Source: Laetmonice hystrix (taxonomy: Eukaryota). From it: DNA of 64,000 nucleotides. The stretch covers positions 30,876,001 to 30,940,000 of the forward strand of contig OZ249436.1 of the NCBI GenBank assembly GCA_965235115.1, in the 5' to 3' direction. The notes under the pieces are model-generated. The model ran no database searches and was not told the origin of the DNA. It saw only the letters and a program-made list of their open reading frames with translations. The translations under genes were made by a program, and so were the position numbers. How positions within the stretch are numbered: the stretch's first letter is position 1; every line of letters starts with the position of its first letter. Positions 4,278 through 49,087 of the stretch are shown piece by piece.

Positions 4278-6074
4278 TCAGTCGTCAGGAAGCAATGCAC
4301 AAGGTCTGTGGAGCTCCTGCCCAACTTCATGAAACCACTTGTTAGCCACCCACTTTGAGCCAACTATTACGGGGCAGGCAGCGTGCCTACTACGGTAATC
4401 TTTACTTCCAGATCTCCTCAGGTTGAACCAGAGAACACAGGCGCCTTCCTCTGGCTGTACTGTCACCCCTACCTCAGTAAACACAGTGGCTCCCCCTGAC
4501 GGCACGTCAGAGAGGTAACACAGGACAGTGGCCAGTCGGTTCCCGGTGTCCCAAAGGGAGGCGCTGTCCTCCACAAAATCAAAATGTGGGTTGTAATGGC
4601 CCCCTATACCATAATTCAAAACCTGTAGGTCCTCTGCTGTAGTTGTACTGAGGTTGGCTATGGCTGCCATTTTGTATGAGCTTTTGGCTATCAAAGGGTG
4701 GTCAGTGTCACTCAACCATGCTGATTTACTTGTTCTTTCAGCTGACCGACTGAAGGTTTCTGATGAGTACACCAGAGACGTTCCCAAATGTGGTTCAGCA
4801 GTTAATCTGATTGCCAGGACTTCAGAACCAGAGAGGGCGTTATGGTAGAGGAGGATTGGTGGATTGGCACTGCTAATGGTTTCTTCCTTCAATGGTGCCA
4901 ATATAAACCAGTCCGGATGGCAGCGGAATCGACAGGTCTGACTGGACACCTGAGACACCAATGGTGCGCGTCCACTCAGGCCACCACGACACAGCTCTTC
5001 ATAAGTCTGCCTTTCTTCAATAACTTCAGATCTGTCTTGAGCTTCAGCGAAGTCTGTCAGTGTCACCCCATCAAAAGCTTCCGTCACATCCCTGTTTTCA
5101 CCATATATTTGGCCAGGTTTATAAGACTTAGCTGCAGCATCTTCGGATGGCTTCACTCTACCAGACAGCTGCAACCTTTCTTGTTTCAATCTCCTCTTAT
5201 AATATTTATGAGCTGATTTCGCCTCAGCATGGCTTGGACATGCCACGACCCAGGCTTTGGTCAGTGACAAAGCCTCTGCCGTGTGTCCTTGAAGATACAG
5301 TGAATCTGCTAAGTATTTGAACAACATTCCTTGATTGATGACTTGAGCCATGGGCTTGAGTTCTTCACCAGGGGTCCGACTGGTATCACACGAGGTAGAT
5401 GCTGGGTTCTCCGTCTCTTCATGTCCAATAGGACGACCAACTGTTCCACCCTTCTGCAGTTGCTGCATCACTTCATAAAGCCAGAGAGTGCTCTGGAAAT
5501 ATTTTTTATGTTCATAAGCCACGGAGCCTATGTCAAAACAGTCATTTACAGAGAGTGACAATGTCTGCCCCATGTTTCCGGGCAAGTTTCCTAACAACAT
5601 GTCACTAACTGACAAGTCATAGGTCTCCTGTAGCCGTAAGAGGCCAAGCGCAGCGCCCCTTACGTCCGTCTCCACGGGGTATGACCTCAAGATGGATCCA
5701 AGGGAATCCACCAGGTTGGGGCCTCCCTCCTCCTCCAGTATCAAAGTCCGGGCCTGCCGCCAGTGACTCACCAGGTCTTTGATCACAAGGTAATTATTCA
5801 CGGGGTGGTGAAGAAATCTGTTGTCAGTCCTTTCCAAGTACATCAGGCTGTTTTCTTCCAATGAGTCTGCTATCCGTTTGAAAGCCTCCGCCCGCCTGCT
5901 TCCCCCAGGCGTCCCGTGCCGTGCGTGTTGTCTGAGCTCGGCGACGAGGGAGAGACCCTCTCGGAGTGCCTTCTCTACACCGGCAACCGAGGTAAACACC
6001 TCGGGTAATGCCGACGGCGGCAGGCACACGAGGAGCAGCAAGGATGAGGAGGCAAGGGAGAAGACAGCGTCCAT
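4278..6074 (-). CDS. P4HA: Prolyl 4-hydroxylase alpha subunit-like (collagen P4H alpha family), 598 aa, whole CDS in one exon
   Basis: Signal-peptide-like N-terminus (MDAVFSLASSSLLLLVCLPPSALP) and P4Ha_N motifs (HPVNNYLVIK, GAALGLLRLQETYDL). TPR-like region (DCFDIGSVAY, YLADSLYLQG), YEELCRG. Intact 2OG-Fe(II) oxygenase motifs: NYGIGGHYNPHFD (HxD), GNRLAT, GGATVF, RHAACPV (distal His), KWVANKW (2OG-binding Lys). A splice acceptor (ctcctctaccatcaacag) lies 7 nt before the ATG. Confidence 0.95.
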   Translation of the reverse strand: MDAVFSLASSSLLLLVCLPPSALPEVFTSVAGVEKALREGLSLVAELRQHARHGTPGGSRRAEAFKRIADSLEENSLMYLERTDNRFLHHPVNNYLVIKDLVSHWRQARTLILEEEGGPNLVDSLGSILRSYPVETDVRGAALGLLRLQETYDLSVSDMLLGNLPGNMGQTLSLSVNDCFDIGSVAYEHKKYFQSTLWLYEVMQQLQKGGTVGRPIGHEETENPASTSCDTSRTPGEELKPMAQVINQGMLFKYLADSLYLQGHTAEALSLTKAWVVACPSHAEAKSAHKYYKRRLKQERLQLSGRVKPSEDAAAKSYKPGQIYGENRDVTEAFDGVTLTDFAEAQDRSEVIEERQTYEELCRGGLSGRAPLVSQVSSQTCRFRCHPDWFILAPLKEETISSANPPILLYHNALSGSEVLAIRLTAEPHLGTSLVYSSETFSRSAERTSKSAWLSDTDHPLIAKSSYKMAAIANLSTTTAEDLQVLNYGIGGHYNPHFDFVEDSASLWDTGNRLATVLCYLSDVPSGGATVFTEVGVTVQPEEGACVLWFNLRRSGSKDYRSRHAACPVIVGSKWVANKWFHEVGQELHRPCALLPDD

Positions 6075-8335: not shown

Positions 8336-9303
8336 AAATCAAATTTTGACACAGAACTGTCGTGGTCTGTGGCAGACTTCATCACGTTCCCCCTGCTAAG
8401 TATAGGTGTTCTATTTATAAATTCTATATAAAGTTAGGATGATTGTTGACTAAACTTGTTTCAAAATTCTGCTCCTGCAGTTAAATAAAAGCCAGGGGTT
8501 CTGTCCAACATAAAATCCATTTGTTTACAATCAAATGTCATCTAGCTGTTTAGGACAGGTAGTTGGTATTTGGTACAATCAGCTCAATCGACCAGTTTGA
8601 ACATGAGAATATCAACTCCAACATGGTACAAAATTAGCAATTTTGAAGCTATAATGTCCTGAACATATTTTTCAATTTGAGCCATTTTTGCATACTGGTG
8701 AAGTTGAAATTTAGTCAGTGTAACTAAGGGAAGCCATCATTTGGAAGTTCTAAACCTTATGTAAGATACAAAACGATATCAGTTCCCAGGCCTCTTATCT
8801 AGATGTAAGAGAACTGTGAAGCAACAAAAAAACAATGTCAACATTCTCATGGAATTGCCCAGGTTCCGCAGGACAAAGCTCTGGACGCTCTATAACTGGC
8901 TATATCTGTAAACGTTTCCTCATTTGAACCAAATTATTTAGGTACATCACATGATGTTTTTGTCAGGTTTGGGGCCATTATAAATCAGACCAGTCAAGAA
9001 ACACATAGATCTCTGTTACATAATCATATATGACTGATGATCAATAATTCTGAAAGCTGATCATATTCTAAGCAAAGTCCCGTTTCTTGACACTACTGAT
9101 GATTGCATTCACAGAGATCAGGACTAGCTTTATATCTTAAACATCCCGGAACATGTTCAAAATAAATATTTCATTTCATTTATAATTATTCCCGCGAAAA
9201 ATCAAGACACAACAAGACACAACTCACAAAATGCATGTTAATGAAAGCAAGGCTTTATCCTGATATTTTTCCCTTTTGACTCACCAATTCATCAAGATAA
9301 CGT

Positions 9304-10491: not shown

Positions 10492-11240
10492 CCGTCATGG
10501 TCTTTAATTAATAACTTTAGACCATAATATTATACGTGTATTACTAATTTAAAGTTTGAAGGAAGAAACTTAATGTGCCTGGGTGTGATATTTGAATTTA
10601 ATAGTTACTTTTACAGAGGGGGGGGGTCGAAAAGAACAATATATATATTATTATATAGTTTCCTCAAGGAGTCCAGCGCTTGCCCAGCTAGGCTATTATG
10701 GCGATGTCTTAGCCAGGCACGCTCCTCCCATGCAAAACTCCTGAGGGAAGCACTGTAACTATAAGGCAGGCGCGGATCATGTTGGGGGCCCAGGGGGGCA
10801 TCCGTGATTGAGGCTGAGCCTGAGGCAGTGAGGCTGAGGGAGGAATGAAGAAAAGATTTTTTGTGTGTCCTCTGGCTGCTCTAATTAGACCCGAACTGTG
10901 TAATATAAATCTCCCCCCAGCTGCCCGATGGCCTAGTCTAAGAGTAGTACCCCAATTGGGCCTAACTCCAGTACAAGTAGGCCGGCCAGTACTAAGACTA
11001 AGAGTACACTGTACAACAGTCTGCCAAAAAGCAACTGAAGTCTGAACTGGCCCCGGCTTTGCCGTTGCACGGAACGGGCCTACCGTCACCGTGGCCGTGC
11101 CGTGGCGTTACTCGTCGGCAAGTTTTAAAGTTATGCTATCTTATTCAACTTCAAGGGCCATAAATAGGCCGGCATTATAAACCTATATGTCAATATATGC
11201 GGTATTGATGTCACTGAGTACCTAGGACATAACGTCTTAC

Positions 11241-11320
11241 CAAAGAAAGCCGCACTTCACCGTTTGAAGGCCCTGGATAGTGGATTGGCTTGACCTACAC
11301 CTACACCTCCACGCCACCAT
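11241..11320 (-). other. Candidate first exon of the P4HA-like gene (5' UTR or in-frame N-terminal extension)
   Basis: Starts just downstream of the NRF1 site on the minus strand and ends in a good donor TTTG|gtaaga (11235-11240). The ATG at 11320 is open to the donor and joins the 6081 acceptor in frame. Confidence 0.5.
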
Positions 11321-11333
11321 TTGTCTCGCACAG

Positions 11334-11413
11334 TGCGCATGCGCAGTTTGTTTTGTTTACTTCCGCCATGCGTAAAGATGACATCAGCCACGCTGCGTTG
11401 AGTCACGGTGAGT
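11334..11413. promoter_or_regulatory. Compact bidirectional housekeeping-type promoter and first exon of the BCL-2-family gene
   Basis: Perfect NRF1 palindrome TGCGCATGCGCA (11334-11345), forkhead TGTTTAC (11354-11360), ETS ACTTCCG (11359-11365) overlapping YY1-like CCGCCAT, AP-1 TGAGTCA (11399-11405). Plus-strand donor CG|gtgagt at 11408 and minus-strand donor at 11240 point outward on either side. Confidence 0.7.
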
Positions 11414-11817
11414 TTAACCAGTGGAGTGATCTGTGATGGTTGGCAGGATCGAGTAGACCTGTAAACGTTGAACGCATGATCCCATATTGGTCAGTTCTTC
11501 ATCGGCGATTGAACGGGAATCACTTCAAATGGCGCGAACGGGTGCACGGTGACATACGCTAATCGACAGCACGGTGGAGAAGTTTGCAGTTGTATGGATG
11601 GAGCCCTGACCCGGACTTGCGTTTTGATCCCCGCATGCAGTGGGAAATTATCTGTAAATCCTACTCATACCGTTGCGTAATCAAGTCTGAAACTTATCAA
11701 GCTAGCTTCTTTGTGAAGGAACTCGTCCTTCCGTATCATAACAATAGTGAATGTGGACACGCGGTGCTACAGACTGAGAGTGGTGATTGGTGTGGGACCG
11801 CTGATCGAACAACCGCG

Positions 11818-12158
11818 ATGATGTACGGGAATGCAGCAGAGCCAGAGGCCACCGGGCAACAACCGTCGCCGCCGCCGCCGCCCGAGAGTAGGCTCCGTAG
11901 GAGACGTGGGTCGTCGTGTAGTTTGGCGCCGCTGGACATTGACGCGGCTCGGCGACACTCGATAGACCTCGGCCAGGAGTGCATTAACCTCTTCCTAGCA
12001 TCCTCCGACAATGATGTAGCAGACAGTGAGCATGGTGACCACGGTCCCTCAATACGAGAGGTTCAGGAGGAAGGACAAACGCTGTTTGCAGATTTTCTAA
12101 AAGAGCAGATAGCAAGTGAGGGGCTGCAAGAGCCTCCGGTATTAACACCGTTAAGCAG
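11818..12158 (+). CDS. BCL-2-family apoptosis regulator, first coding exon
   Basis: MMYGNAAEPEATGQQPSPPPPPESRLRRRRGSSCSLAPLDIDAARRHSIDLGQECINLFLASSDNDVADSEHGDHGPSIREVQEEGQTLFADFLKEQIASEGLQEPPVLTPLS. Ends at consensus donor AG|gtgagt (phase 2) and joins the BH3 exon in frame. The last segment resembles helix alpha1 of BAK/BAX-type proteins. The start codon is inferred; the acceptor ctacag at 11772 precedes it. Confidence 0.75.
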
Positions 12159-13348
12159 GTGAGTTGGCGTCTAAAACTTTAATTCAGTTTCATTATTAGA
12201 ATTCATGGCTATGCTTGGGATTTCAGTGTGGCCTTTCCGAGCTAAATCCACAGGAATTAGCTTTGACATGATCATAATCCACTGTGTCCGTAAATGGCAA
12301 TTCAGCATCCAAGCACAAGGTTCTATGCACTGCTGGTCAACTTTAGAGATACATTACAGAAAATATCCATACCCACACAAACGAGAAAAGTATCAGTCAA
12401 AGTTTTATTTTGGAAAAGGTGGCAGATTGTTGGTTCTTCAGCCACAACTCAGAGAAGAAGGGAACTTAACATGTATGGATGTATAACATTACCAGACATT
12501 TGAAAAGATTTGGATTTTCATTATTTCGACCAGTTTAGATTAGAAAAGGAACTATTGCTCAGTACAGAGCTACCAGCAGATCAATATGTCATGACCAAGA
12601 CAATCACAAACATGATGGAGCCCTATGATTAAAACTTTAGTTTTACTGTGGGGTTGGTTCAGTGACATGTAATGACCGTGTCTTTAAGCCAGCCCCTGCA
12701 TGAAGGAGAGAGAACTGAATACTGCCCCACAACCATAGAAATGCCAGGAACAGGCATTGGTTCAGGGAATGTAAACTTGTAATGCTTGGTTCTTAGATCA
12801 GCACAACTTAGAAGGTTCTAGTCTGGTGGATAATAGATATAGCAATACACACAACTGTATAACACCAAGAAGCCAATGTCTGTCTGCTATAAATGCTCAG
12901 ATTATGTAATCAGAAAGATGTGAGACAAAATATATATTGGTGTAGTGGAATTTGCTTTAATCCCGCATCATCACCGCAGGTGCAAACAAAATAGAAATGG
13001 CTGTACCAGTTGAGGGGATCTCGACATATAAAACTCTGATATGTAAAATTCTCTTATAATTATGTATACTCAGAAAGAGGGGAAATGCGTTTAAGTGTCT
13101 CTGGCATACCATACTGATGAGTGTACTAATCAGTAAATATCTAATTACAAAATACACATCTTTAGATATTTTACTGTTTTACATATAGATTGCAAATCCC
13201 AGTCTTTCAATAGATTTACTTGATGAGGATTATATCAAATTCATCAAGGTTGTGCACATCAGTAAGGTAGTTTGGGAGAATGCATACACACATGGGGCGT
13301 GAAGATAGTACATGTATTTCAAGACTGACAGCAACTCCATCCTGTCGA

Positions 13349-13368
13349 GAGCATGTCCAGACATGCTC
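13349..13368. promoter_or_regulatory. p53/p63/p73-family response element
   Basis: GAGCATGTCC-AGACATGCTC is two RRRCWWGYYY half-sites, 20/20 match, zero spacer, both with CATG cores. It lies about 1.2 kb into the intron after the first coding exon of the BH3 gene. Confidence 0.8.
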
Positions 13369-15689
13369 ACATGTATAACCATGCACTTCCCAGTTCCAGG
13401 CTTCAATGTTAAATTATTCTGGTGGTAACCATCTCTAGGTCACTAAAAAGTCTCATATATCAGAGTCAGGTTGTTACTGGTGGGAAAGTGTGACTTAGTA
13501 TTGCACCCTCAGTGCCTCTTTCTCTTCAGTTTCTCAATTATTTAATTATAAAATCTATGTGTTGATCTTCTTGAATTTTTATATTAGCAAAAGTTATGCT
13601 AAAAATGGCGATGATCAAATCGACAATTCATAATGTATGAAGCCTTCCCAAATTTTTATTTCTCAAATTCTCAAGGTGTAATGGTAAATATATGATTTTC
13701 AACCATGAATATGAAACTCGAGTAAACGTAGTTTGTCAATATATTTTACAGCTATTTTAGGGCGTTATCATCCGTTATCTTGAGTTAAAATGTAGCACAA
13801 GTCCGACACCTATCATACTCATAGGTCGGTTGTGTATCAAGTGTTAACTGTGCCATATGATATCCTCCAGAGTCCAGTCTTACACCTAGCCGTGATGATC
13901 TCACTGTTTGGTCAGAGGGAGAGAGTGACAACCATAGCCTGCCTTATCTACTCAGGGCCTAAGTGTGGTCCAAAGTAAAAGACCCAATGTTTGTTTTCCT
14001 ATGAGATAGGACATGTTCAGGAGACGTAAACCCAATTAAGTTCTGGCATTTGTGCCAGCCATTGCCAAGAGTTTGGCTGGTAAACTGTTGTTGCTGACCT
14101 GGAAGCTGTCTTTAAACACAGACATTTAAGAACATAAGTCCCTTTTCAGATCTAGTATAAGAGATGCACTGTTAGAGAATTTTGAAAGCTGTTACTTTAA
14201 ATGAAAGTAAAGATGTGAGTTAAAATAAAAGACAGGCATGCATGTTAGTACCATCTTCTAAAACATAATCATTATCCTAAATCTAGTTTACAGAGTGGAA
14301 GATCGTAAATATTAACGGTCATTACCACCATAGTAGCTGACACCATAATGTGGAAATCCCATAAATCTATTTTTATTGACCAGGCTCAGAGTTCAAAAAC
14401 TAGATTGGTTTATATCCAACAACCACCATTATCTTAGAATATGATCTTACAGTAGATGCAGTTCATTTCTGGAACAGATCCTTATTCGGACGAATAGGAA
14501 GGGGGGGATGGCAAGGATTCTTAAATTTTGCACTGCGGGAAGAAGTGAACTATAGCCTCTGCATGCTAAGTGCAGCAATCACATGATTACCGTATTACAT
14601 GGGGAGACCGAGAAGATTCTACTTTCTGTCAATTTATATTTCAATCACAGTAGTAAAGTCACCAGTGGCAATGTGATTGCAATATGTTAACGATTGGTCA
14701 ATTCTTAATATTAGATCCTCTCCGTGTTCTTTCCGAGAATTTCCGACCTGGAATATTGAGTCGAGTTGTTAAAAGATCAACCGAGGCCAGCCACTCAAGG
14801 CGCCTGACCCAAAGAAGTCACCGGTAGTGTATAACACCAGAACTTCACCCGTACGCTGTTAGCACTTGGCTCTTGACGTTACCCGGTACACAAATCTGGG
14901 TAAACTTCACACTCAGTTCACTCCATTCGGCAGTCAGATGGCACGTTCTGGTAGATGGATTAACGAATTGAATACATGTTGTAAACATAACGATTAGTTT
15001 AATCCTTTAGTTATGTACCGTTGTATTATAGTGGCGGTAAGTTCTGGTACTCGGAGTTAAGGAGTCCAGAAATAGAACATTAGGACAGTTTGTGTTCCAC
15101 ATCTTTATCTGATGTTATAAAAAATGGATGTGATAGCAAAACAAAGATAGTTGACGTTTTTATAACGGCGTAATGGAATTAATATTTCCAGGGTAGAAGC
15201 CATGGAACAAAGAATTCATAATAATAATTGTAAAGTAGCTTCAATTTTCTCGTTTTTTATTCAATGAAAGAAAAAACCTAATAGTTTTGAAGTGATTCCC
15301 TCATCATTTTGGGAGTTTGACAGTCCCAATAATCGGCAAGTTAGGCTTGGCTTCTTCTTGTCGTTAACGTGTCAATTTTTAAACTGATCCAAATAAAGCT
15401 GCTGTGTCGGAAGTCATCAAAAATGATTCATCAGACTCCAGACAGTTGCGGTATCTTTGGATCATTGGTGCCGTGTCTGTCTGCTTGCCTGTCTGATTCT
15501 TGGCGCCAAGTCGAGCATGGCGAAGGTCAGAGAGTTGGCACTCTCCACGCAAAAGGCCAGCAGACTCTCCAGAGAACCCTTGCCTTAACAACCCCCAAGT
15601 CTGGCGGGCTCGGAGTGCAAGTGTTTGGCACCAGTCCCACCTGCCCCGCCACACACCGAGTGACACCTGTAACAACAGAGGGCGCTGCT

Positions 15690-15900
15690 GATGAGGAGCG
15701 CGCCCGTCGCCGCCGCTGACGCCGGGCCACGGGACGAGTCAGTGGACCGGGCCGCGACCCCGGCCTCCCGGGATCCCGGCCCCTCGGCCCCGGGATCCCG
15801 GCCCCTCGGCCCCGGGATCACGGCGGCTCGCCCGAGAGCAGGCAGCGGGGGCCGAGTACCGGGTAACTCGCGGTCATGCTTCGCTGGACCAATTCAGGTG
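15690..15900. repeat. CpG-rich island with a 22-bp tandem repeat built on the palindrome CCGGGATCCCGG
   Basis: Very GC-rich stretch in AT-rich intron. Unit ccgggatcccggcccctcggcc repeated about 2.4 times near 15768-15822. Confidence 0.7.
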
Positions 15901-16804
15901 TAGCCTGATTGATGGAACTGTTGCGGGAAGATGACTCAGTTGAGTTTAATAATAATAAAAATTAGCTTTCCTCCGGAGATACTTGCAGCCTTCCGTTAGG
16001 CCTAAATTGACAACTTATTGTCATAATATTAAACTCATATCTTGCCATAAGGCCTTAATGACACTTTAGATAGCGGATCAGAACTTGTAACTAATTACAT
16101 GGAGACGACTTGCATGACAACTGTTGCCATGCCCCGACACGTGTGAGAATGGACAACCCCCTTTCACTCCCGATCCCTGATATTGCCACAGCTGTGAGGT
16201 TTAACCCTCACATATACACAATGCTATTTGACCGTATCCATGAGGGACACTAATTACTCGGTGCCAATTAGCCAGTGCCAGTTTGCTGAGCGTGTGCAGG
16301 CAGCTGTAACACTAGACTCCCGGCTTGAGACAATACCATGCTCATCCGGTCTCTCTGCTGGAACCTTTCCAATCCCTAATCTACGGGTTATTATCAGATC
16401 AATTAAGAGGTCTTGACTGAGTTCATCAATGCCGTAGGAGGGCGGGGGTTCAGGTTGTTTTGTTACTGTCAAACAGTGGAACATCTACAATATATAAAAT
16501 GGTTGTATAGAGGTGGATTCAAGTGTGTGAAATATTTACCCCTGCCCCTTTACTGTTAATTAGGAGTTGACCGACGACTTGAGTGGGCTGTAAATATGCG
16601 GTTCGTTACATGGGGTAAGGTGTTCGGGTTAAGTTTAGGGTCGTAGATACAGTACACTGGCTTAGACCGCGGTGTCTCACCTTAGAATCGGTGACACCCG
16701 GAACAAAAGGGCGTGGCTGGTTAATCACTCGACGCAGATGGTCAGTACCCTAGGCCCGTGTCTCTGCCAGCCCCCCCCCTCCCGCACTATTGTTCCTTTG
16801 TTGG

Positions 16805-16821
16805 TGGCCGCCAGGGGGCTC
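16805..16821 (+). promoter_or_regulatory. CTCF-like motif inside a Sox/TCF-site cluster
   Basis: tggccgccagggggctc is near-consensus CTCF. Flanked by AACAAAAGG (twice), CTATTGTT, CCTTTGTT and CTATTGTG within about 16700-16915. Confidence 0.55.
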
Positions 16822-17720
16822 TCCCTGTGTGTCCTGGTGGCTGACAAGACTCGATGGCTGGCACTATTGTGTTGTGTTCTCATCACTCTCAAAGGGTCTC
16901 CTAACAAAAGGTCGCCTATTGGGAAGCAATGCAGTGAAAAGGTCAATTATTGCATGTTGGTCTGCGTGGGTGAGGTGCTGGGGTTGGTCAAGTTGGCGGT
17001 GTATGGAGTGCCGACGAGACAGTTAATCAGTGTTCCTAGAAGTGATGAGGTGCGGAACATTTCTGTCTTAGATGATTTTGCGGTGCTTTCTTCTCTGAGC
17101 AATGCAATTTGATTTAGTTGGATAGATCAACAGATCATTTGCTATTTGTTCTCACCCAATTTATCTTAAAATTAAAATAAAAAATATTGTACAATGGCTA
17201 TGAATGGATTGGATTAGATAAATTATCTGTTACCTATAGTTCCAGGTGAACACAGAAGTATCTCTTACAAAAGCATCTTCACACAATTTATAACCTTATG
17301 GCATTCCATAGAAACGTGGGTCAGTTCCTCCAGCAACATCAAGGTTAATTGCCGTGAAGGTGTTGGAGAGTATTTACATTGTACATGATATGTTGTGATA
17401 GGAAATGAGACCCAGATTACAATCGCATATATTGCCTGGCACATGCAGACCGGACTAGATTTGCCACTTTCTCTGCAGCCTGCCGTTGGTGTTGATGAAC
17501 AGTTAATACAAATGTATATTTGCGGCGAACCATTTGGTCTCGCTTTGGTATGCGCAATTGATTGTCAGTTAGTAGTTTGCCTTGCTTTATTAAAGATTAA
17601 AACAACGTTTGAATTTTAAATCACTATTGCATTATCTGAATGAGTAGTTTCAATGAGTGATTAACCTTGCAGATTCGTCCCATGTATTGATCTTTTCTTG
17701 TAATTTGTATGTTTTCATAG

Positions 17721-17838
17721 TTCACTGAATCAATACAAAAATCCATTATGGGCCAAGGCGGGACGGGAGCTCCGAGAAATGGCAGACGAATTCTCCAGAA
17801 CACACAAACGCCGCCAGATACAACATAGAGCACAATCT
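17721..17838 (+). CDS. BCL-2-family apoptosis regulator, BH3-encoding exon
   Basis: Acceptor gttttcatag| and donor |gtaagt, 118 nt, phase 2 in (matching the upstream exon) and phase 0 out. Translates SSLNQYKNPLWAKAGRELREMADEFSRTHKRRQIQHRAQS, containing the BH3 pattern L-x-x-x-(G/A/S)-D-E-F. Confidence 0.88.
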
Positions 17839-20800
17839 GTAAGTTACTTTTTATTATACCCCTCTGTGGTGTATTCTTTGCTTGTTTCTTTTGTAGCCTT
17901 AGCAGATTCCTCCGTTCGACAGCTTCATTCAGAGGTCGCTTTTTTTGCATGGCTACTTGTTGCAACAGTAGAATGAAACACGGTAGAGCTCGGTCAGGTG
18001 GCGGAAAGTTAGCTTTAAGGAGGGAATAGGAATGTGTGTCTTCATTAGTAGCTGGGCTACAAATATAGGTATTGATATTGGTAGGTATTCATCTGCTAAC
18101 ATTTTCTGTCTTGTTTAAAACTGTTATAAAGGTGATTAAAAATTATAGCCTTCAATTGATTGAGCCGTATAATATGGCACATTCTCCAGAAAATGTGTAC
18201 CGTAGACGGTGGGCTTCTATAGATTAACTTCTGTCTTAGAGTCGGTGGCACAAAAGAAGGATGCAAGGTTCTTATCATGTATTAGTATATAATTTAACTT
18301 GCCCATTGTTGTATTCGATTACTTTATCATTCATAACAACTAAGATACATCATACCCTAAATAAATCTAAAAATAACCAGTGATAATAAACAAGAAAATG
18401 GACATTTATAACTAAAAATGGTCATTGTCGGTTTAGGCATATTCAGCCGTGTTCTTTCATTAGTCACAATTCAAGTTTGATATCAGCACAAAGAGTGCAT
18501 TATGCATATATAATAGTCCCGCATGGTGCACATCTATACGGTCAAACCGCAAGTAGAATCTATCCATATTAATGTCCCAATTAATGCCTTAAACATAATT
18601 GTTTGTTATATGATCTCAGCAAGTAGTCAACATAAAGTAAGCCCGAGTAGTTTATTCCGCGGTATGTTGTCCGACAGATCGCACAACATTTGTATACAGA
18701 ATGGGACGTGGGAAGTGTTGTGCTAGGAAGATCAACCCTCTATCAGGAGTGCTGGTGTGGTAGATCTCTATGTCTTCTCGGGGCCGACTTTGTTTATTAT
18801 CGTTTCCAACCAAGCATCCCTGTCTCACTACCTTGGCTGGCACCCTGTTGAGAGGAGTTTGGGTTTGGACCTTCTTAACTTTCCTCCACTGTCCAGGCCC
18901 TGGGAATACCGCGGCCATCGGGGCCCTTATCGTGGCTTAAACGGCAGCGACCGGCCGCCAGATCGGCTGCCGAGAGGGCGGGGGGCGTTAATAAGGGCTG
19001 CCTCTAAAGTTCCTCGGCGATGCTCATGTCAGCATTTCAGCTGTCTGGATGGCCAGAATATGGATGGCCTGGGCTGAGTCATCCACCCGGACAGACAGGC
19101 TGAAGGGATCGTGAAGAGACGAGGCCGAGTTTTTCTACACCAGGGTGCCAAGGAGGGTCTAAATACCTTGGGGCACGGTGACCCCAGAGCCATGACACTG
19201 CTTATACTTGGAGAGGCTGATAAGTTGGAGTTAGCCACTATCATCACGGGGCTACTCTTCACTGTATAAAGAATGGCAGTGATGCCTGGGCACGGGGGAC
19301 GTTGTGTAAACTATAGTTCTTTGTCTGGATATATGCTGAGGACAGTTGTTATAGGTTTGAACATTGATGAATTATTTTGTACGGAAGCTGTTAAAAATTA
19401 TGTAAATTGATACATCACAGAAATAAACATATTGCCCGACGAGGAAGAAAGGAAGACAGGATGTCGTCAAGGACCACTAAAGACATCTCATGTGTGTAGA
19501 ACTTAGTTAAGAATACACAGATGATGAAACCCAGATTTATCCGCGTTTTTACTTCTATCAAGGCTTTATTTTTGAATGTAAAAACGTTACATAAGTTTAG
19601 GCTTTTACAGCTCTAGGATTGGCATTGACAAAAACAAGGTTTAGTTGACGTGTTTTAATTTAAGGCCATTGGATGTTGTTGTATCGCTATCTAAAGACGC
19701 TTAGTATCAATCAATGACCCTGAAAGGACGTGCAAGACACAAGGAAAACTAAGTGTCAAACATTGAAGCACCAAAAGTTAAAAACAACGAACTTTGCAAA
19801 AATGTACAACGGGACACGTTGCAGTGGGTCGATGAAGTAGAGAGGGTTTTCGAGTAGGGGAGGGGGCAGGGGGTGTTCACCCAGGGTTTGTGAGGGGGCA
19901 GTCCAGGGTGTAGACCTGGCTGTATCCAGTAACCCTCTACCATGTTTTAACATGGTGTAGTCCACTCTCTAGTGCTGACGGACCCTGGACCGGACCCTCG
20001 ACAGACAGATGGCCAGGGTTAGAACGATAAAGTCACGGTGGGGAAGTCTCACTTCGGGATTGCAGATGGTAGACACGGTGTCTTATCTGGAGGATTTAAA
20101 GTGTGTGACCAATTAGCTCTTCAACAAGACCGTTTACTTCTTGCTAAATGAAAAAGGCCGTTTCTAACAAATATTTTTATAAAGTTGTAAACAGTGAAAT
20201 GGTTATATGTATACCGTACGTTAATTTGGGAGCGTTCGATTCTTGACGATAATTTAGTGTTCAGGTAACATCTGGTTGAAATAATCACTTGTAAAACGCA
20301 TGCACCACCAACACATGGCAAGTATCGCCGAGTAAACAGATTGTGTGTTTGGTGGGTACGTTGCCTTCCTCATTCATTTTAGATCCCGCAGAGTTTACTG
20401 GCGCTAAACAGTGGCTTGAAAGGCTATGTGCAATAGTTATATAATGCTTGGACCAGCATTCAACAATATTGAGGCCACCTTTATTGTTGACGGCCAAGCA
20501 ATAAGGCCGATTGACCAACTTTAACTAAGCTTTCGTAACAGGTTATCCGTGCATATATATAGAGCAATCGATTTTCCTTCCTGGGGTTCGGTTGTAAATC
20601 TGAATGTTAAAAGATATATTAGATAGCCCAGAATTAAGTGTTTGTTAAAACCTATGGCACAATATCGTGGTATTATGCTACGTACTAACAAAGCCAAAGG
20701 AGCAAACCAGGAAACGTGGAATGCTGTTGCTGGACTTTAGCCCAGTTTGAACTCTTGGACCCTTATCAAAGGTAAAACCGTAGCGAGATCTGAACGGATC

Positions 20801-42600: not shown

Positions 42601-45600
42601 CTTCCCGTAACTAACTTGGTAACAGTTTTTCTGGCAAAACATCGAGTCCCGTTAGCATCCAGTTTACTGCGTCACATCACTGTGAGTGACTAAAACACTT
42701 ACGGCATTTCTAGGACACCTTCAGTGTGAAAACAGACTTTTTCTCACTGGTTTTGCCGTTGATGATGGGATTTATTTTTCGCCACCATCCACGGGATGAT
42801 GATAATGACGATGATAAAAGAAAAGAAAAGAAAGAAATTTCTTTCTTATCAAGTTGGTTCATCATTGTTTTGAAATGAAAAGTATAAACCCAAGTTGATT
42901 TTGTTAACCCAGTCAGGGTTTTATTTAAAAAATTCGCGGATTCCTGTCTATGAAGGCATGTAGGTAGCTACCTCATTTTGGTCAATTATAAATGATATGC
43001 TATTTTGTTTTAACATATTAACAAATGTTGTTATCCAGCACATCTAGGAGAAGACCCTGGATTTGAGTTAATGTTCAGTATTAAAATGTTTTCGTGTTTT
43101 GAAGTGATTGTTTAGGAGGTTGGTAATGCCTAAGGTTATTGACGTGTGCGACCATCTGACTGTTGACTGGGCTGGTAACAGGTGGGCCAAGTCGAAGAAC
43201 CAGGTCGGACGTGCTTAGAGAAAACATTCAAGGTGTGTTTCTGGGGAATGTGTTCCTAGGTCATTCATATTGATGAGATTATCATGAGAGGGATGACTAC
43301 CTCCTCGTCTACAAGCCTGCGGCTCAAACATTATTCTGAAAGCATACAGTTCAGGTTGTTGATTTCCATTCTGTGAACGGAATGGAAAGCTGAGGAGGTA
43401 GCGAAGAGAGATTGACATATCCCAAGGTGACCCACGGTTTGCTATTGGCAGGCCACCTGTTGCCTGATTTTGGCCGAGGGAGACCACGGCAGCGGCTTCC
43501 GTCAGCCAAAAAGGGGAAAAACCGGACATGTTCACCTGACAAACTGGACCTTGTAATGAGGAAGTTTGGCCTGTCAGCTGTCGCCAATCCGCCCAGGATA
43601 TAGCCGATCAGATTATATCAGGATATATATGCGAGGCCAAGGGGATTACCCCAACTCATGGCACACATGTCACCTGACCCATACACACCTAATGATTATC
43701 TTTTCATCGATCCACTGATCAGCAGTAAATTACCAGCTAATTATATTTTTAACTGGAAGACACCTGTGTTTTTTTTAATTTTGTATCGATTACAGTTATA
43801 TCTTTGAATTATAATTTAAGTATCATACGGTTATATATGTGTCGTCACTTATCGTTTTTATCTTATCTTTGCGTTTTGGATGACTATGTGGAATGGATTT
43901 CTTGAACAGTTTGCTTATTAAATGGTTATGACGTGATATGATGCATTGTGAAAAACTTAGTCACTGTTCTTACCGTAAAACATTTCCGATTCCTTCCGAC
44001 AACACCGAATACTTGAAGAAAGCATACGGTAGCGCCAGATCTCATGTACAGGTTCTAGGAAACTACTGTATCCTAGATAATCTTTCCTTGATTAAAGAAG
44101 TTAGTTATAAGCACTTTTCATCCAGGTTCAAAATGAAATAAGGACTCTCAAAAGGGCAGTTTCACATGAAGAAATGCAGTCCGTTTAGCAAAGCGAGATA
44201 TCGGGAATTCAGGCCCCTTTCATATTAGCACTGTTTGAAGTCGAGTGCTTTGTCTTTGTCTAGACAGAGGGAACGAACTGTCCAGGCCACGAGGAATTAC
44301 CCAAATCAGTGGCCAGGTCTGAAAAGACGTAATGTTGGTTCGACTTGCGTTTTTTCACCGAAAATTAGTCCACAGTGATTCTTAATGTAGGAAAATATCG
44401 CGACAATGTTTTACTTTGTTTTACTGAACACCGAGATCAGTTAACAGCCTCATTTTGTAAAAATAACTTTCTTTAGAATTTCTATGGAACCGCTCAGGCA
44501 CTTTGTATAAGAGGTTTCTCAAAAGTCAAAAAAAGATAGTAATTTAAATATCAAGGATATCAGTAGTTGTATTCTCAAACACTTTCACTGTTTAGCAATA
44601 TCAAGTGAACCCATATAAAATATACAAAATACAAGTCGATTATGGTTTTGGAAATAACTGTTCTCTAAAAAAAAATGTTTATGATGTTATCTCAGTAACT
44701 ATGGCCACGCGACGATATTTCAGACCGTTGAGAATTGTTTCCGAGAAACCACTAATTATAGGTGGCCTACTGAGTTTTTCCTTGAGACTGACCCAGTCTT
44801 CACAATTTTAGCTCACATTTTACGAGTCTGCTTCTTGTTTGACACGACTTAGCAGCCTTCAGGTAGCTTTACTAAACTTGGGATGTTTGGGATACGTTTC
44901 CAATATCAGATCTTTGTTTTGGTGTATTAGGCCTTTTGTATAGCACAGATATTTTACTAGATTGTTGGCATAAGTTAGTATAAATAACGGGTAAAGGAAT
45001 ATGCCGCATCATGAATGGTCTGCTTGCGTCTTAAGATCAGGTGAGAGATCATGGTTTTCCTCTTTGATCCAAACATTGCATGATCCAAGCAGTCCCAGAG
45101 GTTAACGTGCCAGAAGCACAGTCCAACCGCACAGAATACCACGGATGAAAAATGTATGGCTTTCCTGAACGATGGACAAAACATTTGGTCAAGGACTTGG
45201 CATTGCAAGCATCGTGACTAAGGCAAACAAAACTGATTGAGATCTGATGCCGTTAACTGAAAGGTAGTGTTGTCCAGACGTTCACTGACAACCGGCAATA
45301 AAATACGGGCGTTGACATGCAAAGAAATACAGAGTTGAAAACTTTGTGAAAGTTAACAAAAACAATACAATTAAAATTAAATAGCATGGGATGACCACAT
45401 TGAAGGATATATGCTAGGCTTCCAAGAAGGAAGTACGAAGTATCGCAGGCAGGGGTTGTTTTGTTAGGGGGCCGGGGGGGGGCTCAGCCTCCTAGATAAA
45501 AATATATTGAGTGTTTAAAATGATCCTGTCCATTGGTTGGAAATGTTGTAGATGTGTACCTGTTTGTTAAAAGCTAAAATTGTCTATTTAACAGGACGGA

Positions 45601-46089
45601 AAGTACTGGTGTAGATGGTACATACAATCACACAAGTACTGGTTTAGATGGTACATACAAGCACACAAGTACTGGTGTAGATGGTACATACAATCACACA
45701 AGTACTGGTTTAGATGGTACATACAATCACACAAGTACTGGTGTAGATGGTACATACAATCACACAAGTACTGGTGTAGATGGTACATACAATCACACAA
45801 GTACTGGTGTAGATGGTACATACAATCACACAAGTACTGGTGTAGATGGTACATACAATCACACAAGTATTGGTGTAGATGGTACATACAATCACACAAG
45901 TACTGGTGCAGATGGTACATACAAGCACACAAATACTGGTGTAGATGGTACATACAATCACACAAGTACTGGTGTAGATGGTACATACAATAACACAAGT
46001 ACTGGTGTAGATGGTACATACAATCACACAAGTACTGGTGTAGATGGTACATACAATCACACAAGTACTGGTGTAGATACAATCACACA
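45601..46089. repeat. 33-bp minisatellite, about 15 copies
   Basis: Unit aagtactggtgtagatggtacatacaatcacac with few substitutions. It explains the periodic ORFs 45588-46082 and 45710-46090. Confidence 0.97.
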
Positions 46090-49087
46090 TTAAAGCGCGA
46101 AATTAAAATAAACATGATTTATCGAGTGTTTGGCGTATCATGAAAAAGACGCAGGCGGTTGTTCCAAAGCAAACCTAACGTTCAGACTTTCGCTGAGAAT
46201 TACTGAAGTGAGTCAAGTTGCATCGTTACGACCGTGTTGCTAAGGTTTGCTCAGTACCAATATTATTATCTTACAAATATCATTTATATTCTTGAGTGTA
46301 TGGCCTAGTTTTGATGTTTTGATTCTAAATCATGTAATAACCTCCACCCGACGAATCCACCTAATCTACCGTATCAGTAATTGTTATTTGAATTTAGGTA
46401 GTTGTCTTTCATACACACTTTTAATGAGTTTCAGGTTCGGTTTGCATGTTTTGATCATGACTTCTTTTTTTAAACTTGGCTGATCACACGCCTCAGCAGA
46501 ACTTGGTTCAGTCGGTAACTCGCAGAGCTGAGCTAATCGAGCACGATTTGAACAGAGCTTAGGTAATCGAAGTGATTTGGTACAAGTTGAAGGCAGTGAG
46601 CTGTGAGCGGTAAGGTGAAGGGTGGTGATTTCACCGCTAGCTCACTGCGTCAGTTTAATGACTGCATACTTCGCTGCCCTTAGAACACTCGCCATAGAGC
46701 CGTACCTGTTCACTCCCTGTTCAAGCCTGTAGTGTTCTTTCACCATCGCCGTTCAGGCGCCGATTACGGCGAATATGGCCTTAGCTAAGGTGATGGCGTT
46801 TTTAAAGCCGCTTTCGAAATCGATTTGTTCTTTATCGCTATAAAAAAATTGGTTTGATGCGGTGATTTTGAATAATTTAAACTTTAGAAAAAGCATTAAT
46901 AAGCCAGGGGGACCCCAGATGCCCCCACCCTTCCCCACCATAACAACATTGGTACATCGTTTAGTGCTAGACTTATAGACGTAGAAAGGTAAATCTTAGG
47001 AAAATATTGCGCATGTACTAACAAACGCGCCACTTGCCCACAATGTCTTCCAGTCACTGATACAAAAATATACGCAAAATATTTTTATGTCACTATAGAT
47101 CCAATTTGCTTCAAAATTATTGAAAGCTCTTCCAAGTGACGGCCAAAGTAAACGTGTTTTTGTGGAGAATAATCCGTGGATATTTCTCTTATATCCCTAA
47201 TTTTTCATTAATCTCATATCAACGCCCGTATTGGAATCCACGTGACAAGCTTCCCATTGTCCAATGACTAGAACTCCGTAAACTAGAACAAAGCTACTTA
47301 AAAGATGGAACACTTTTGTTCTTTTATAAAAGTTTCTACACAGCTATCCAACAATACGACCTTAATTCTCATTCCCATTGAGATGAATCCATAATTTCTA
47401 TATCACTCTGGGAATGCCCATCTAAACTGAGTCATTACGGACTGGCTATACTTGCAGCGACCTATTGTTTGATCAGCTGTTGTAGGGCGGTGGAGATTGG
47501 GAATTCCATGGTGATGTCGGAACCGCTAGGTCAGTTTCAGTCATGCTCGGTTCGCCACTGAGTCACACTTGGGTGGAGTCGACATTTCCAGCCTTGCTCG
47601 TTCCGGCCCGCCCGCCACCAGCCTGCATGGTTGACCACATGGTGGTGGTCGCCCAGTGGCCACCCTGGCTGGCTCCTGTCCGTTTCCACCGGACCCTGTC
47701 AATTATTCATCTTAATGACACCTCGTGTCACGCCGGTCTCGTGGCCGCGGCATTCCTGCAGTCCGGCGACACGCTCTGAACATGCTCCTCATTACAGGTG
47801 GCGCTGCACGACGGATTCCAACTCTCCCTGCATGGGCCTCGAATCTGTCAAATCCCTTTTAAGATCTTCGAGGGAGTTCATTCAACCTTGAGGCGGTGCT
47901 CCCGGGGACTGTATAAAATGTCTAAAGCGTGGGTCTTTAAATTATCGAATAGTTTGAGGTATGACTGTTGAATGATCTAAATTCTTACCACTTTCTTCAT
48001 CGTGTATTAATTCTGTTTTTTAAGATAGAAAAGAGGATTGTTATATTCGTGCAGGAACGTTTATACATGTACATTACAGGCCTACCATATCGAGGACAAT
48101 GGATGACTTGCGTTCCTCATCAATTAGCAGCGAGTGATTTTTTTAGGGTAGCTTAGCTACAACGACGGTATCGCTACTGTGGACGGGCAAAGTAACCGAG
48201 TTCCCTTTCAGCCTGATTTCAGTCATATTCACAGCGATAGGAACCATTTAGGGCCCTATGTTACCCCCGAGTCCCAGGGGGTGGGTGAGTGATGAGGAGG
48301 ATGAAGTGAGAAAGAAACCTGCCACCGGGAGGCAATCCCCTACTCTTTTCGAAAAACTGTAAGTGTACTTATATAGGGCCATTCGCACAGACACGGTTGT
48401 ACATAAGCCTTTGATGACCTAGTTGTGGAGCACTGGGGAGGGCCAGTGAGAAAAAAATCCTTTAAGATTAAATAACACATAAACTTGCAACAACATAAAA
48501 GGTTCTATTTAGAGAACATTTTTATCATTTATTGTAGGGACTATTTAATGTGCCTGTGAACAGGCCGTATTCCGTGTTTCCCACAATGCACTGGAAACAA
48601 CATGGCGGCTAAAACGCCAGTGAATTTATGTCTGTTGGATGTTGTTGCTGTTTGCACGAAAAACCGTGGCGGGGCAGCCCAGTTGGTGTTAGGAAATGGG
48701 AGGGTATAACCTCAGCAGCAAATCTATGTGAGAAGGTGTTGTCATCGACCACGACATGAAAACAGCAGAGAAATCTGCAACCTGCTTGAGGATTTGTGTG
48801 GTACCTTTCTCTAGTCCTTTCTGCATCGTAAGCAAGGTGGGGCGCTGAGAGGTGGGGAAACGATGCTTTTTCCATATCCTGTCGGTAAACTATCAATCAT
48901 TTCTGTGTCACTCTCCCACAAAGCTTGCAATATACACTTCTGTGTTTCTTTTAACGTTAGAGAGGGGGCAAACGTAGCCAGAACCTGTTCTAGTGATGCT
49001 TCAAAACTTTCAAACGATCCGCTGTCCGCTATTTTGACTGTTGGTTATTTGGTACTTTTTAATATTTTTCGCAAAGGGTCCCTTTAA

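What the first reader, a model, noticed from the sequence alone, without database searches (positions are those of the whole stretch)
13349..13368. Perfect p53 response element in the intron of the BH3 gene
Seen: GAGCATGTCCAGACATGCTC, a 20/20 match to 2x RRRCWWGYYY with no spacer. My hand estimate at 40% GC is about 0.003 expected perfect sites per 64 kb. Known: mammalian PUMA (BBC3) and BAX carry functional p53 elements in their first intron or promoter. Inference: this locus is a direct p53-family target, a candidate DNA-damage-to-apoptosis switch in an invertebrate where PUMA/NOXA orthologues are not obvious.
Basis: partly seen in the sequence, partly recalled or inferred. Interest (0 to 1): 0.88.

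Follow-up and report, generated by a model that had tools for sequence, protein, structure and literature searches.

The report
Perfect p53 site in annelid death-gene intron
A flawless 20-base docking site for the p53 family sits in the first intron of a cell-death (BH3) gene of a marine worm; it could link DNA damage to cell death in this animal group, but binding, induction and conservation are all untested.

Summary
GAGCATGTCCAGACATGCTC lies at 13349-13368. It is the only perfect, spacer-less match to the p53 consensus in the window, and its flanks are single-copy in the 627-Mb genome.

The host gene is real. Exon 1 (11818-12158) has a relative in another assembly. It splices in frame to a 118-nt exon (17721-17838) carrying a BAD-like BH3 helix. 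That helix is modelled into the groove of the animal's own Bcl-2-like protein: score 0.74, best of 3 controls 0.02. The site lies 1.19 kb into the intron between these exons.

The genome shows one p53-family locus. Its DNA-binding domain is about 85% identical to the Alvinella pompejana domain, so the animal is an annelid. The DNA-contact residues checked are kept, and the Alvinella domain binds a near-identical consensus by gel shift.

Two cautions apply:
- The genome holds 31 perfect sites against about 34 expected and 31 for a reversed control, so the site could arise by chance.
- No RNA run and no relative's DNA could be read, so induction and conservation are untested.

The gene may not be BH3-only. 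BAX-like exons 58.7 kb downstream are phase-compatible with the BH3 exon.

My odds: real p53-family element about 0.55, chance match about 0.33. If real, it is a new member of a known kind.

The parts
13349..13368 (.). Perfect spacer-less p53-family consensus: two RRRCWWGYYY decamers, both with CATG cores, forming an 18/20 palindrome
   Evidence: Single-copy flanks. One of 5 loci of this class in the genome. Unchanged on the alternative haplotype contig of run X2.
10950..12150 (+). CpG-rich island (observed/expected about 1.0); inferred promoter plus exon 1 of the BH3 gene
   Evidence: The transcription start is not mapped because no RNA was found.
11818..12158 (+). Coding exon 1: ATG at 11818, donor gtgagt at 12159, ends in phase 2. 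It carries two RRxS basophilic kinase-type motifs and a conserved VQEEG..LF..FL...I.S.GLQEP block.
   Evidence: One relative, P0001, at E 6.7e-8 (46% by phmmer, 44% in the pairwise alignment). Single copy in the genome.
12159..17720 (+). Intron 1 (5562 nt) holding the site. CpG-depleted from 12150 to 14550. No Pfam or Rfam feature inside.
13291..13383 (.). CATG-dense patch around the site: 6 CATG in 93 bp, the densest in the window. The extra CATG have poor p53 flanks.
14700..16050 (.). Second CpG-rich, GC-rich island inside the intron, with 22-nt tandem units at 15751-15832. Role unknown; it could be an alternative promoter.
   Evidence: Its ORFs have no Pfam match.
17721..17838 (+). BH3 exon: acceptor ag at 17719-17720, donor gtaagt at 17839. 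One base completes the split codon from exon 1; the exon ends in phase 0.
   Evidence: Pfam BAD E 0.03 and BMF E 0.046, both under cut-off. Nearest Atlas clusters are BH3 families. Best PDB matches are BAD BH3 peptides. Complex model 0.74 against 0.02.
17770..17790 (+). BH3 core L-R-E-M-A-D-E within LWAKAGRELREMADEF
   Evidence: In the model the Asp touches the Arg of the KWGR (BH1) motif of the native Bcl-2-like protein.
9139..9158 (.). Near-consensus p53 site with 2 mismatches and a perfect second half GAACATGTTC, 2.7 kb upstream of the ATG. It is within chance expectation.
   Evidence: 4 sites at up to 2 mismatches in the window against 1.84 expected

Best explanation
The 20-mer is most likely a real response element for the animal's p53/p63-type protein, placed 1.19 kb into the first intron of a pro-apoptotic BH3 gene, 1.53 kb downstream of its start codon.

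Proposed mechanism:
1. DNA damage activates the p53-family tetramer.
2. The tetramer binds the two abutting CATG-core half-sites.
3. This raises transcription from the CpG-island promoter about 1.2-2.4 kb upstream.
4. The induced protein inserts its BH3 helix into the groove of pro-survival Bcl-2-like proteins, or acts as a BAX-type effector if the distant exons belong to it. Either way the cell tips towards mitochondrial apoptosis.

Shown: the site, that it is single-copy, the exon structure with frame continuity, conservation of exon 1 in one relative, and a p53-family gene with the checked contact residues intact.

Supported only by a model: the BH3-groove fit.

Inferred: binding of the native protein to this site, inducibility of the gene, and which promoter is used.
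For: - Perfect zero-spacer site with two CATG cores, and not a repeat.
- Only 26 distinct loci (31 sites) of this quality exist in 627 Mb, and only 5 loci have CATG cores. A chance hit inside the roughly 6-kb 5' part of one particular gene has probability about 3e-4 (rate).
- Of 20 other perfect loci fetched, none lay within 5 kb of a recognisable death or DNA-damage gene. They sit by LINE or LTR elements, CHGN, TALPID3 or unknown ORFs.
- The host gene bears a BH3. Splice sites and phase fit. BAD BH3 peptides are the best PDB matches. The nearest Atlas clusters are BH3 families, score 0.87 with 183 shared features.
- Complex with the native Bcl-2-like exon: ipSAE 0.74 against a best control of 0.02. 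The mark was reached by 51 of 78 solved complexes and 2 of 108 mismatched pairs. The runs agree in at least 92% of contacts and the partner's pLDDT is at least 62.
- One p53-family locus was found. The equivalents of human R248/R249 and the R273-C275-A276-C277-R280-R282 segment are kept.
- Its DNA-binding domain is about 85% identical to the Alvinella pompejana domain, which shifts the consensus GGGCATGTCC x2 as a tetramer (PMC8901663).
- Precedent from cited literature: the human and mouse bax intronic element, and p53 up-regulation of Bad (titles confirmed).
Against: - The genome shows no excess of such sites. Perfect sites: 31 against 31 for the control and about 34 expected. CATG-core sites: 6 against 7. 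At up to 1 mismatch: 121 against 93, with 11 of the 121 in one tandem array. Most such sites here must therefore be chance-born.
- No expression data: the only runs holding the gene are DNA.
- Conservation could not be tested.
- The site lies in the CpG-depleted part of the intron, not in either CpG island.
- The SNP-free stretch around it on the second haplotype (378 bp) is no longer than others nearby, so polymorphism shows no constraint.
- The BH3 is BAD-like, and BAD is mainly controlled by phosphorylation.
- The link between site and gene was noticed after the fact.
Confidence: 0.55

Rival explanations
1. Chance match: the 20-mer arose by neutral drift and has no regulatory role. It may still bind p53 in vitro, but nothing depends on it.
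For: - Genome-wide counts equal expectation and the reversed control.
- Sites with up to 1 mismatch barely exceed the control once a tandem array is removed.
- Other perfect sites sit beside transposons and unrelated genes.
- The site lies in CpG-depleted, AT-rich intron sequence, with no sign of constraint from the second haplotype.
- The upstream neighbour, a prolyl 4-hydroxylase, also belongs to a family with a reported p53 target (title confirmed). This shows how easily a story can be fitted to any neighbour.
Against: - With about 5e-8 sites per base, a perfect site within about 6 kb of the start of one of perhaps ten pro-apoptotic Bcl-2-family genes has a genome-wide probability of a few in a thousand.
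- The position, early in intron 1, is typical of real elements.
- Both cores are the high-affinity CATG type.
Confidence: 0.33
2. A real p53-family element that serves another transcription unit. Candidates are the divergently oriented prolyl 4-hydroxylase gene (4278-6074, minus strand, 7.3 kb away) or an unannotated transcript from the intronic CpG island at 14700-16050.
For: - The P4H gene is intact and single-exon, and a human family member is a reported p53 target (title confirmed).
- A second CpG-rich island lies 1.3-2.7 kb downstream of the site.
Against: - The site is inside the BH3 gene and much closer to its start than to the P4H gene.
- The island's ORFs have no family match, and no RNA family lies nearby.
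Confidence: 0.06
3. The near-palindrome (9-nt arms, 2-nt centre) inside a CATG-rich 93-bp patch is a binding site for a different dimeric factor, or a relic of local duplication or an old mobile-element end. On this reading it meets the p53 consensus by accident.
For: - 18/20 palindrome. Only about 3.5% of consensus-matching sites would be this symmetric.
- 6 CATG in 93 bp, the densest patch in the window, with ACATGTAT occurring twice.
Against: - The flanks are single-copy and no longer inverted repeat includes the site.
- p53 elements are palindromic by nature.
- With 26 loci, about one such symmetric site is expected anyway.
Confidence: 0.06

Closest known systems
Intron-1 p53 response element of mammalian BAX, and the p53 sites of PUMA/BBC3
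   Same: A p53 consensus element in the 5' intron of a pro-apoptotic Bcl-2-family gene. The proposed logic, DNA damage to p53 to a death gene, is the same. If the distant BAX-like exons belong to this gene, the parallel with BAX is close.
   Different: - This is a perfect 20/20 spacer-less site, and neither binding nor induction has been tested.
- The animal is an annelid whose factor is of the p63/p73 type.
- The gene has no detectable orthology to PUMA, and its BH3 resembles BAD.
Invertebrate p53-to-death-gene links: C. elegans CEP-1 to egl-1/ced-13, and the Drosophila p53 element upstream of reaper (recalled from the literature)
   Same: A single p53-family protein directly switching on a small death activator through a consensus-like site near the gene.
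   Different: - Those are ecdysozoans and have genetic and biochemical proof.
- The fly target is an IAP antagonist, not a BH3 protein.
- In the papers I searched I found no such link reported for annelids or other lophotrochozoans.
BAD (Pfam PF10514), the phospho-regulated BH3-only protein
   Same: - The BH3 LWA..GRELR.M.DEF aligns with BAD peptides.
- Basophilic RRxS motifs upstream of it are conserved in the relative.
- The model places the helix in a Bcl-2-like groove.
   Different: - The Pfam score of 15.2 bits is under the 28.2 cut-off.
- The Ser inside BAD's BH3 is Ala here.
- Exon 1 has no detectable similarity to BAD.
- The protein may continue into BAX-like domains.
Con1 synthetic p53/p63 consensus (GGGCATGTCC x2), bound by the Alvinella pompejana domain (PMC8901663)
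   Same: Same architecture: two abutting CATG-core decamers. The first half-site differs at one position and the second at three, and all the differences stay within the consensus.
   Different: Con1 is synthetic and was tested with the Alvinella protein. Neither this site nor this species' protein has been tested.

Membership tests
p53-family response element | Two RRRCWWGYYY decamers with a 0-13 bp spacer | tested here: met
   20/20 match with zero spacer and CATG cores
p53-family response element | Occurrence beyond chance | tested here: inconclusive
   Locally rare: 0.01 in shuffles. Genome-wide 31 sites against 31 for the control and about 34 expected; CATG-core sites 6 against 7.
p53-family response element | A cognate p53-family protein with intact DNA-contact residues in the same genome | tested here: met
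   One locus found at G000:C30:17687745-17688454. The NRRP loop and the VRICACPGRDRR segment are kept. The domain is about 85% identical to the Alvinella domain 7PC6.
p53-family response element | Bound by the native protein (EMSA or ChIP) | not testable with these tools
   Only indirect evidence: the Alvinella domain binds Con1 by EMSA (PMC8901663).
p53-family response element | Confers damage- and p53-dependent induction on the linked gene | not testable with these tools
   No RNA run holds the gene. The four holding runs are DNA contigs that cover the intron.
p53-family response element | Conserved in related species | not testable with these tools
   The one relative (ENA ERZ26222911) is listed without DNA. 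The metagenome scan found nothing. The genome collection holds no relatives of this genome.
p53-family response element | Not merely a copy of a dispersed repeat | tested here: met
   The 411-base flank matches only itself in the genome.
BH3-only protein (BAD-like) | Family profile over the curated cut-off | tested here: not met
   PF10514 BAD scores 15.2 bits against a 28.2 cut-off; PF15185 BMF scores 13.5 against 27.
BH3-only protein (BAD-like) | BH3 core with four hydrophobic positions, a small residue and an invariant Asp | tested here: met
   LWAKAGRELREMADEF. Best PDB matches are BAD and BIM BH3 peptides. Nearest Atlas clusters are BH3 families.
BH3-only protein (BAD-like) | The helix binds the groove of a pro-survival Bcl-2 protein | tested here: met
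   In silico only. Score 0.74 against a best control of 0.02; the mark was reached by 51 of 78 solved complexes and 2 of 108 mismatched pairs; runs agree in at least 92% of contacts; partner pLDDT at least 62; the Asp touches the BH1 Arg. The result may partly reflect memory of solved BH3 complexes.
BH3-only protein (BAD-like) | No BH1/BH2 domains in the same protein | tested here: inconclusive
   None within the window. BAX-like BH1/BH2 and tail-anchor exons lie 58.7 kb downstream on the same strand and are phase-compatible.
BAX-type multi-domain effector | BH1/BH2 core most similar to BAX, plus a C-terminal anchor | tested here: met
   This holds for the downstream exons only. L014:1513-1740 has BAX as best PDB match at E 2.3e-10. 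A tail-anchor exon follows 183 nt later.
BAX-type multi-domain effector | The BH3 exon and the BH1/BH2 exon are on one transcript | not testable with these tools
   No RNA is available. For: phase 0 to phase 0, a 34-residue DEF-to-ELF spacing equal to that of the native Bcl-2-like gene, and no other good BH3 exon in between. Against: a 58.7-kb intron containing several CpG-rich patches.

The most novel reading that the evidence does not exclude
Exons 1-2 and the BAX-like exons 58.7 kb downstream form one gene. This would be a BAX-type effector carrying a BAD-type, kinase-regulated N-terminus and a BAD-like BH3, switched on directly by the p53/p63-type protein through the intron-1 site. Survival-kinase sensing, p53 input and membrane permeabilisation would then be merged in one protein. 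It would also place the p53-to-BAX intronic link at least as far back as the protostome-deuterostome ancestor.
Probability: 0.18. Interest if true: 0.72.

Novelty: new member of a known kind. Interest (0 to 1): 0.5.

Why it matters
Direct p53 control of death genes is documented in vertebrates, nematodes and flies. In the papers I searched I found no report of it for annelids, molluscs or their allies, and BH3-only proteins were described there only as 'potentially present' (PMC8998228). A verified element here would give that third large branch of animals a concrete, testable link from DNA damage to apoptosis. It would also name a new BH3 gene and help decide whether the p53-to-Bcl-2-family link is ancestral or evolved repeatedly. 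As it stands this is a well-anatomised prediction, not a demonstration.

Tried and rejected
- **Repeat origin:** rejected. The flanks are single-copy.
- **Genome-wide enrichment of p53 sites:** none found.
- **Neighbourhoods of 20 other perfect sites:** no death or damage genes recognised. This was a crude screen using only ORFs of at least 110 aa within 5 kb either side.
- **RNA evidence:** the four runs found are DNA contigs from one sample. They show no splice joints or transcript ends.
- **Second haplotype:** the site is identical on the X2 contig, but the SNP-free gap around it is unremarkable, so this is uninformative. Most X3-only differences are not listed, so X3 is undecided.
- **Homologues of exon 1:** the word-index searches were blank, or returned only P0001. 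The full HMMER search gave one relative, whose contigs are listed without DNA. The metagenome scan was blank.
- **Homologues of the BH3 exon:** the word search was blank.
- **Paralogues in the genome:** none.
- **Genes or RNAs inside the intron:** none recognised.
- **The 15.4-15.9 kb island as a duplicate of exon 1:** only low-complexity matches. Its ORF ends in phase 0 and cannot splice in frame to the BH3 exon.
- **Alternative BH3 exon for the BAX-like gene at window-equivalent 75889:** rejected for poor hydrophobic register and lack of usable splice sites.
- **Similarity of the exon-1 helix to BAX/BAK helix 1:** no PDB match at E up to 10.
- **C-terminus of the short gene model:** left undecided between a 58-nt mini-intron giving ...AQSP-stop and a read-through hydrophobic tail.

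Full report
**1. The observation**

The 20-mer GAGCATGTCCAGACATGCTC is at 13349-13368. It is the only zero-mismatch match to two abutting RRRCWWGYYY decamers in the window. Dinucleotide-preserving shuffles give a mean of 0.01. Both cores are CATG, and the 20-mer is an 18/20 palindrome.

Composition gives 0.0035.

The 411 bases around the site match nothing else in the 627-Mb genome. The 'high-copy repeat' refutation therefore fails.

The site sits in the densest CATG patch of the window, with 6 CATG in 93 bp. The extra CATG have poor p53 flanks.

**2. How rare it is in this genome**

| Site class | Observed | Reversed control | Expected from composition |
|---|---|---|---|
| Perfect RRRCWWGYYY x2 | 31 (26 distinct loci) | 31 | about 34 |
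| Perfect, CATG cores | 6 (5 loci) | 7 | 2.1 (4.6 using the window's own CATG frequency) |
| CATG cores, up to 1 mismatch | 121 (11 in one tandem array) | 93 | not computed |

Sources.

Perfect sites as a class are therefore not visibly maintained by selection here. A handful of selected sites could hide within the noise.

I fetched 5 kb either side of 20 other perfect loci. Their long ORFs were LINE and LTR elements, a chondroitin GalNAc-transferase, TALPID3 or unknowns. None was a recognisable death or damage gene.

**3. The host gene**

- A motif search of all six frames found one convincing BH3, LWAKAGRELREMADEF, at 17770-17790 on the plus strand.
- It lies in a 118-nt exon (17721-17838) with an ag acceptor and a gtaagt donor.
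- Upstream, an open frame with ATG at 11818 ends at a gtgagt donor at 12159.
- Exon 1 ends in phase 2 and the BH3 exon supplies the missing base, so direct splicing keeps the frame.
- Exon 1 has one relative among 1.84 billion representative proteins: P0001, 99 aa, E 6.7e-8, 46% identity by phmmer, from a 636-kb contig of ENA assembly ERZ26222911. The shared blocks are SC.L.PLDIDAA, two RRxS motifs and VQEEG..LF..FL...I.S.GLQEP, and both end at the same exon boundary.
- The gene is single-copy.
- Pfam gives only sub-threshold hits for the BH3 exon: BAD E 0.03 and BMF E 0.046.
- The best PDB matches are BAD BH3 peptides at E 0.14-0.3, then BIM.
- The nearest Atlas clusters are all BH3-only families, with score 0.87 and 183 shared features.
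- A complex model of the 39-residue exon with the 149-residue first exon of the animal's own Bcl-2-like gene (L008:1351-1797) scored 0.74 against a best control of 0.02. That mark was reached by 51 of 78 solved complexes and 2 of 108 mismatched pairs. The runs agree in at least 92% of contacts and the partner's pLDDT is at least 62.
- In the model the peptide's Asp touches the Arg of the KWGR motif. This supports a BH3-like fit but does not show binding, and it may lean on memory of solved BH3 complexes.

The site therefore lies 1.19 kb into intron 1 (12159-17720) and 1.53 kb downstream of the ATG.

**4. Local landscape**

- A CpG-rich island (observed/expected about 1) spans 10950-12150. I infer that it holds the promoter and exon 1.
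- The intron is CpG-depleted from 12150 to 14550. The site lies in this stretch.
- A second CpG- and GC-rich island spans 14700-16050, with 22-nt tandem units.
- No Pfam or Rfam feature lies in the intron.
- The upstream neighbour is a single-exon prolyl 4-hydroxylase alpha gene on the minus strand.

**5. The factor**

The search found one p53-family locus in the genome, at C30:17.69 Mb. Its DNA-binding domain is about 85% identical to PDB 7PC6, the Alvinella pompejana domain. The animal is therefore an annelid.

The loop carrying the equivalents of human R248/R249 is kept, as is the VRICACPGRDRR segment (R273, C275-C277, R280, R282).

The Alvinella domain shifts the consensus GGGCATGTCC x2 as a tetramer, although more weakly than human p53 (PMC8901663). 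The site here differs from that probe only at positions the consensus leaves free.

**6. What could not be tested**

- *Expression.* The only runs holding the gene are DNA contigs of one sample. They cover the intron without joints.
- *Conservation.* The relative's contigs are listed without DNA, a metagenome scan was blank, and the genome collection holds no relatives of this genome.
- *Polymorphism.* The second haplotype (run X2) has the site unchanged. However, the 378-bp SNP-free stretch around it is no longer than others nearby, so this says nothing about constraint.

**7. A fork in the gene model**

The strong donor at 17839 implies a further exon. There are two models.

(A) A BH3-only, BAD-like protein ending nearby. 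Either a 58-nt mini-intron gives ...AQSP-stop, or read-through gives a hydrophobic tail.

(B) Just beyond the window, on the same strand, lie two more exons. One is a BH1/BH2 exon (L014:1513-1740, window-equivalent 76531-76758) whose best PDB matches are BAX at E 2.3e-10. The other, 183 nt further on, is a tail-anchor exon.

For model B:
- The BAX-like exon starts in phase 0 and the BH3 exon ends in phase 0.
- The DEF-to-ELF spacing would be 34 residues, the same as in the native Bcl-2-like gene.
- I found no other credible BH3 exon in the 58.7 kb between them.
- The ten longest ORFs in that interval have no family match.

Against model B:
- The intron would be 58.7 kb long and would contain several CpG-rich patches.
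- The BH3 is BAD-like, not BAX-like.
- The relative shows no Bcl-2-domain ORF within 10 kb downstream of its exon 1.

I put A at about 0.55 and B at about 0.3. In either case the site is in the first intron of a pro-apoptotic BH3-bearing gene.

**8. Weighing**

The genome-wide null shows that a perfect site can arise by chance. It does not show that this one did.

At about 5e-8 per base, a chance site within the roughly 6-kb 5' part of a given gene has probability about 3e-4. For any of perhaps ten pro-apoptotic Bcl-2-family genes it is a few in a thousand. Death genes of this class are p53 targets in vertebrates (BAX, PUMA, NOXA, BAD; titles confirmed), and from my own knowledge also in nematodes.

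Several points pull the other way:
- The link was noticed after the fact.
- The neighbouring P4H gene could also be given a p53 story.
- The BH3 identification rests on a short motif and a model.
- Nothing about binding, induction or conservation is known.

My odds are 0.55 for a working p53-family element acting on this gene, 0.33 for chance, and about 0.06 each for another target and another factor.

**9. Novelty**

If real, this is a new member of a known kind: a p53 element in a death gene, in a lineage where I found none reported. Reviews describe BH3-only proteins as only 'potentially present' in lophotrochozoans (PMC8998228, PMC11463336).

I score interest at 0.5. The site is a clean, directly testable prediction, but the decisive evidence is missing.

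Noticed in passing
L014:1513-1740 and L014:1924-2022 (G000:C1:30952531-30952758 and 30952942-30953040; 12.5 kb beyond the window end): BAX-like BH1/BH2 exon (BH1 degenerate, TAER in place of NWGR) followed after a 183-nt intron by a tail-anchor exon. No 5' exons of its own were found. It is phase-compatible with the BH3 exon at 17721-17838.
   Followed up: partly
window 11895-11915 and 11950-11965 (exon 1): Two basophilic RRxS motifs (RRRRGSS and RRHS) are conserved as RRAS and RRQS in the relative P0001. This resembles the kinase and 14-3-3 sites of BAD.
   Followed up: partly
window 4278-6074 (-): Intact single-exon prolyl 4-hydroxylase alpha-subunit gene (P4Ha_N, TPR_P4H and 2OG-FeII_Oxy_3 domains), divergent from the BH3 gene.
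   Followed up: partly
window 14700-16050, tandem units at 15751-15832: A second CpG-rich island, up to 72% GC, inside intron 1, with 22-nt CCCGGGATCCCGGCCCCTCGGC repeats. It has no family match. It could be an alternative promoter or an unannotated transcript.
   Followed up: partly
window 17839-17896: A possible 58-nt mini-intron (gtaagt ... ttttgtag) directly after the BH3 exon. If used, the protein ends one codon later; if not, read-through adds a hydrophobic tail.
   Followed up: no
window 45578-46102: About 500 bp of tandem repeat that is open in several frames (HQYLCDCMY units).
   Followed up: no
G000:C3:15866329-15866844; G000:C3:40640369-40640610; G000:C20:10420579-10420608: Tandem arrays whose units are p53-consensus or near-consensus 20-mers: 11 copies at about 46-bp spacing, 4 copies, and overlapping GAACATGTCT repeats. 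They inflate the genome-wide site counts.
   Followed up: no
G000:C30:17687745-17688158: Positions 25-164 of the 193-position p53 domain profile lie in one uninterrupted 230-codon open frame, an unusually intron-poor layout.
   Followed up: no
L008, L009, L010, L011: At least four Bcl-2-family genes have BH3, BH1 and BH2 up to the conserved GGW intron in a single exon. L008 is a clear Bcl-2/Bcl-xL-like pro-survival gene with a BH4.
   Followed up: partly
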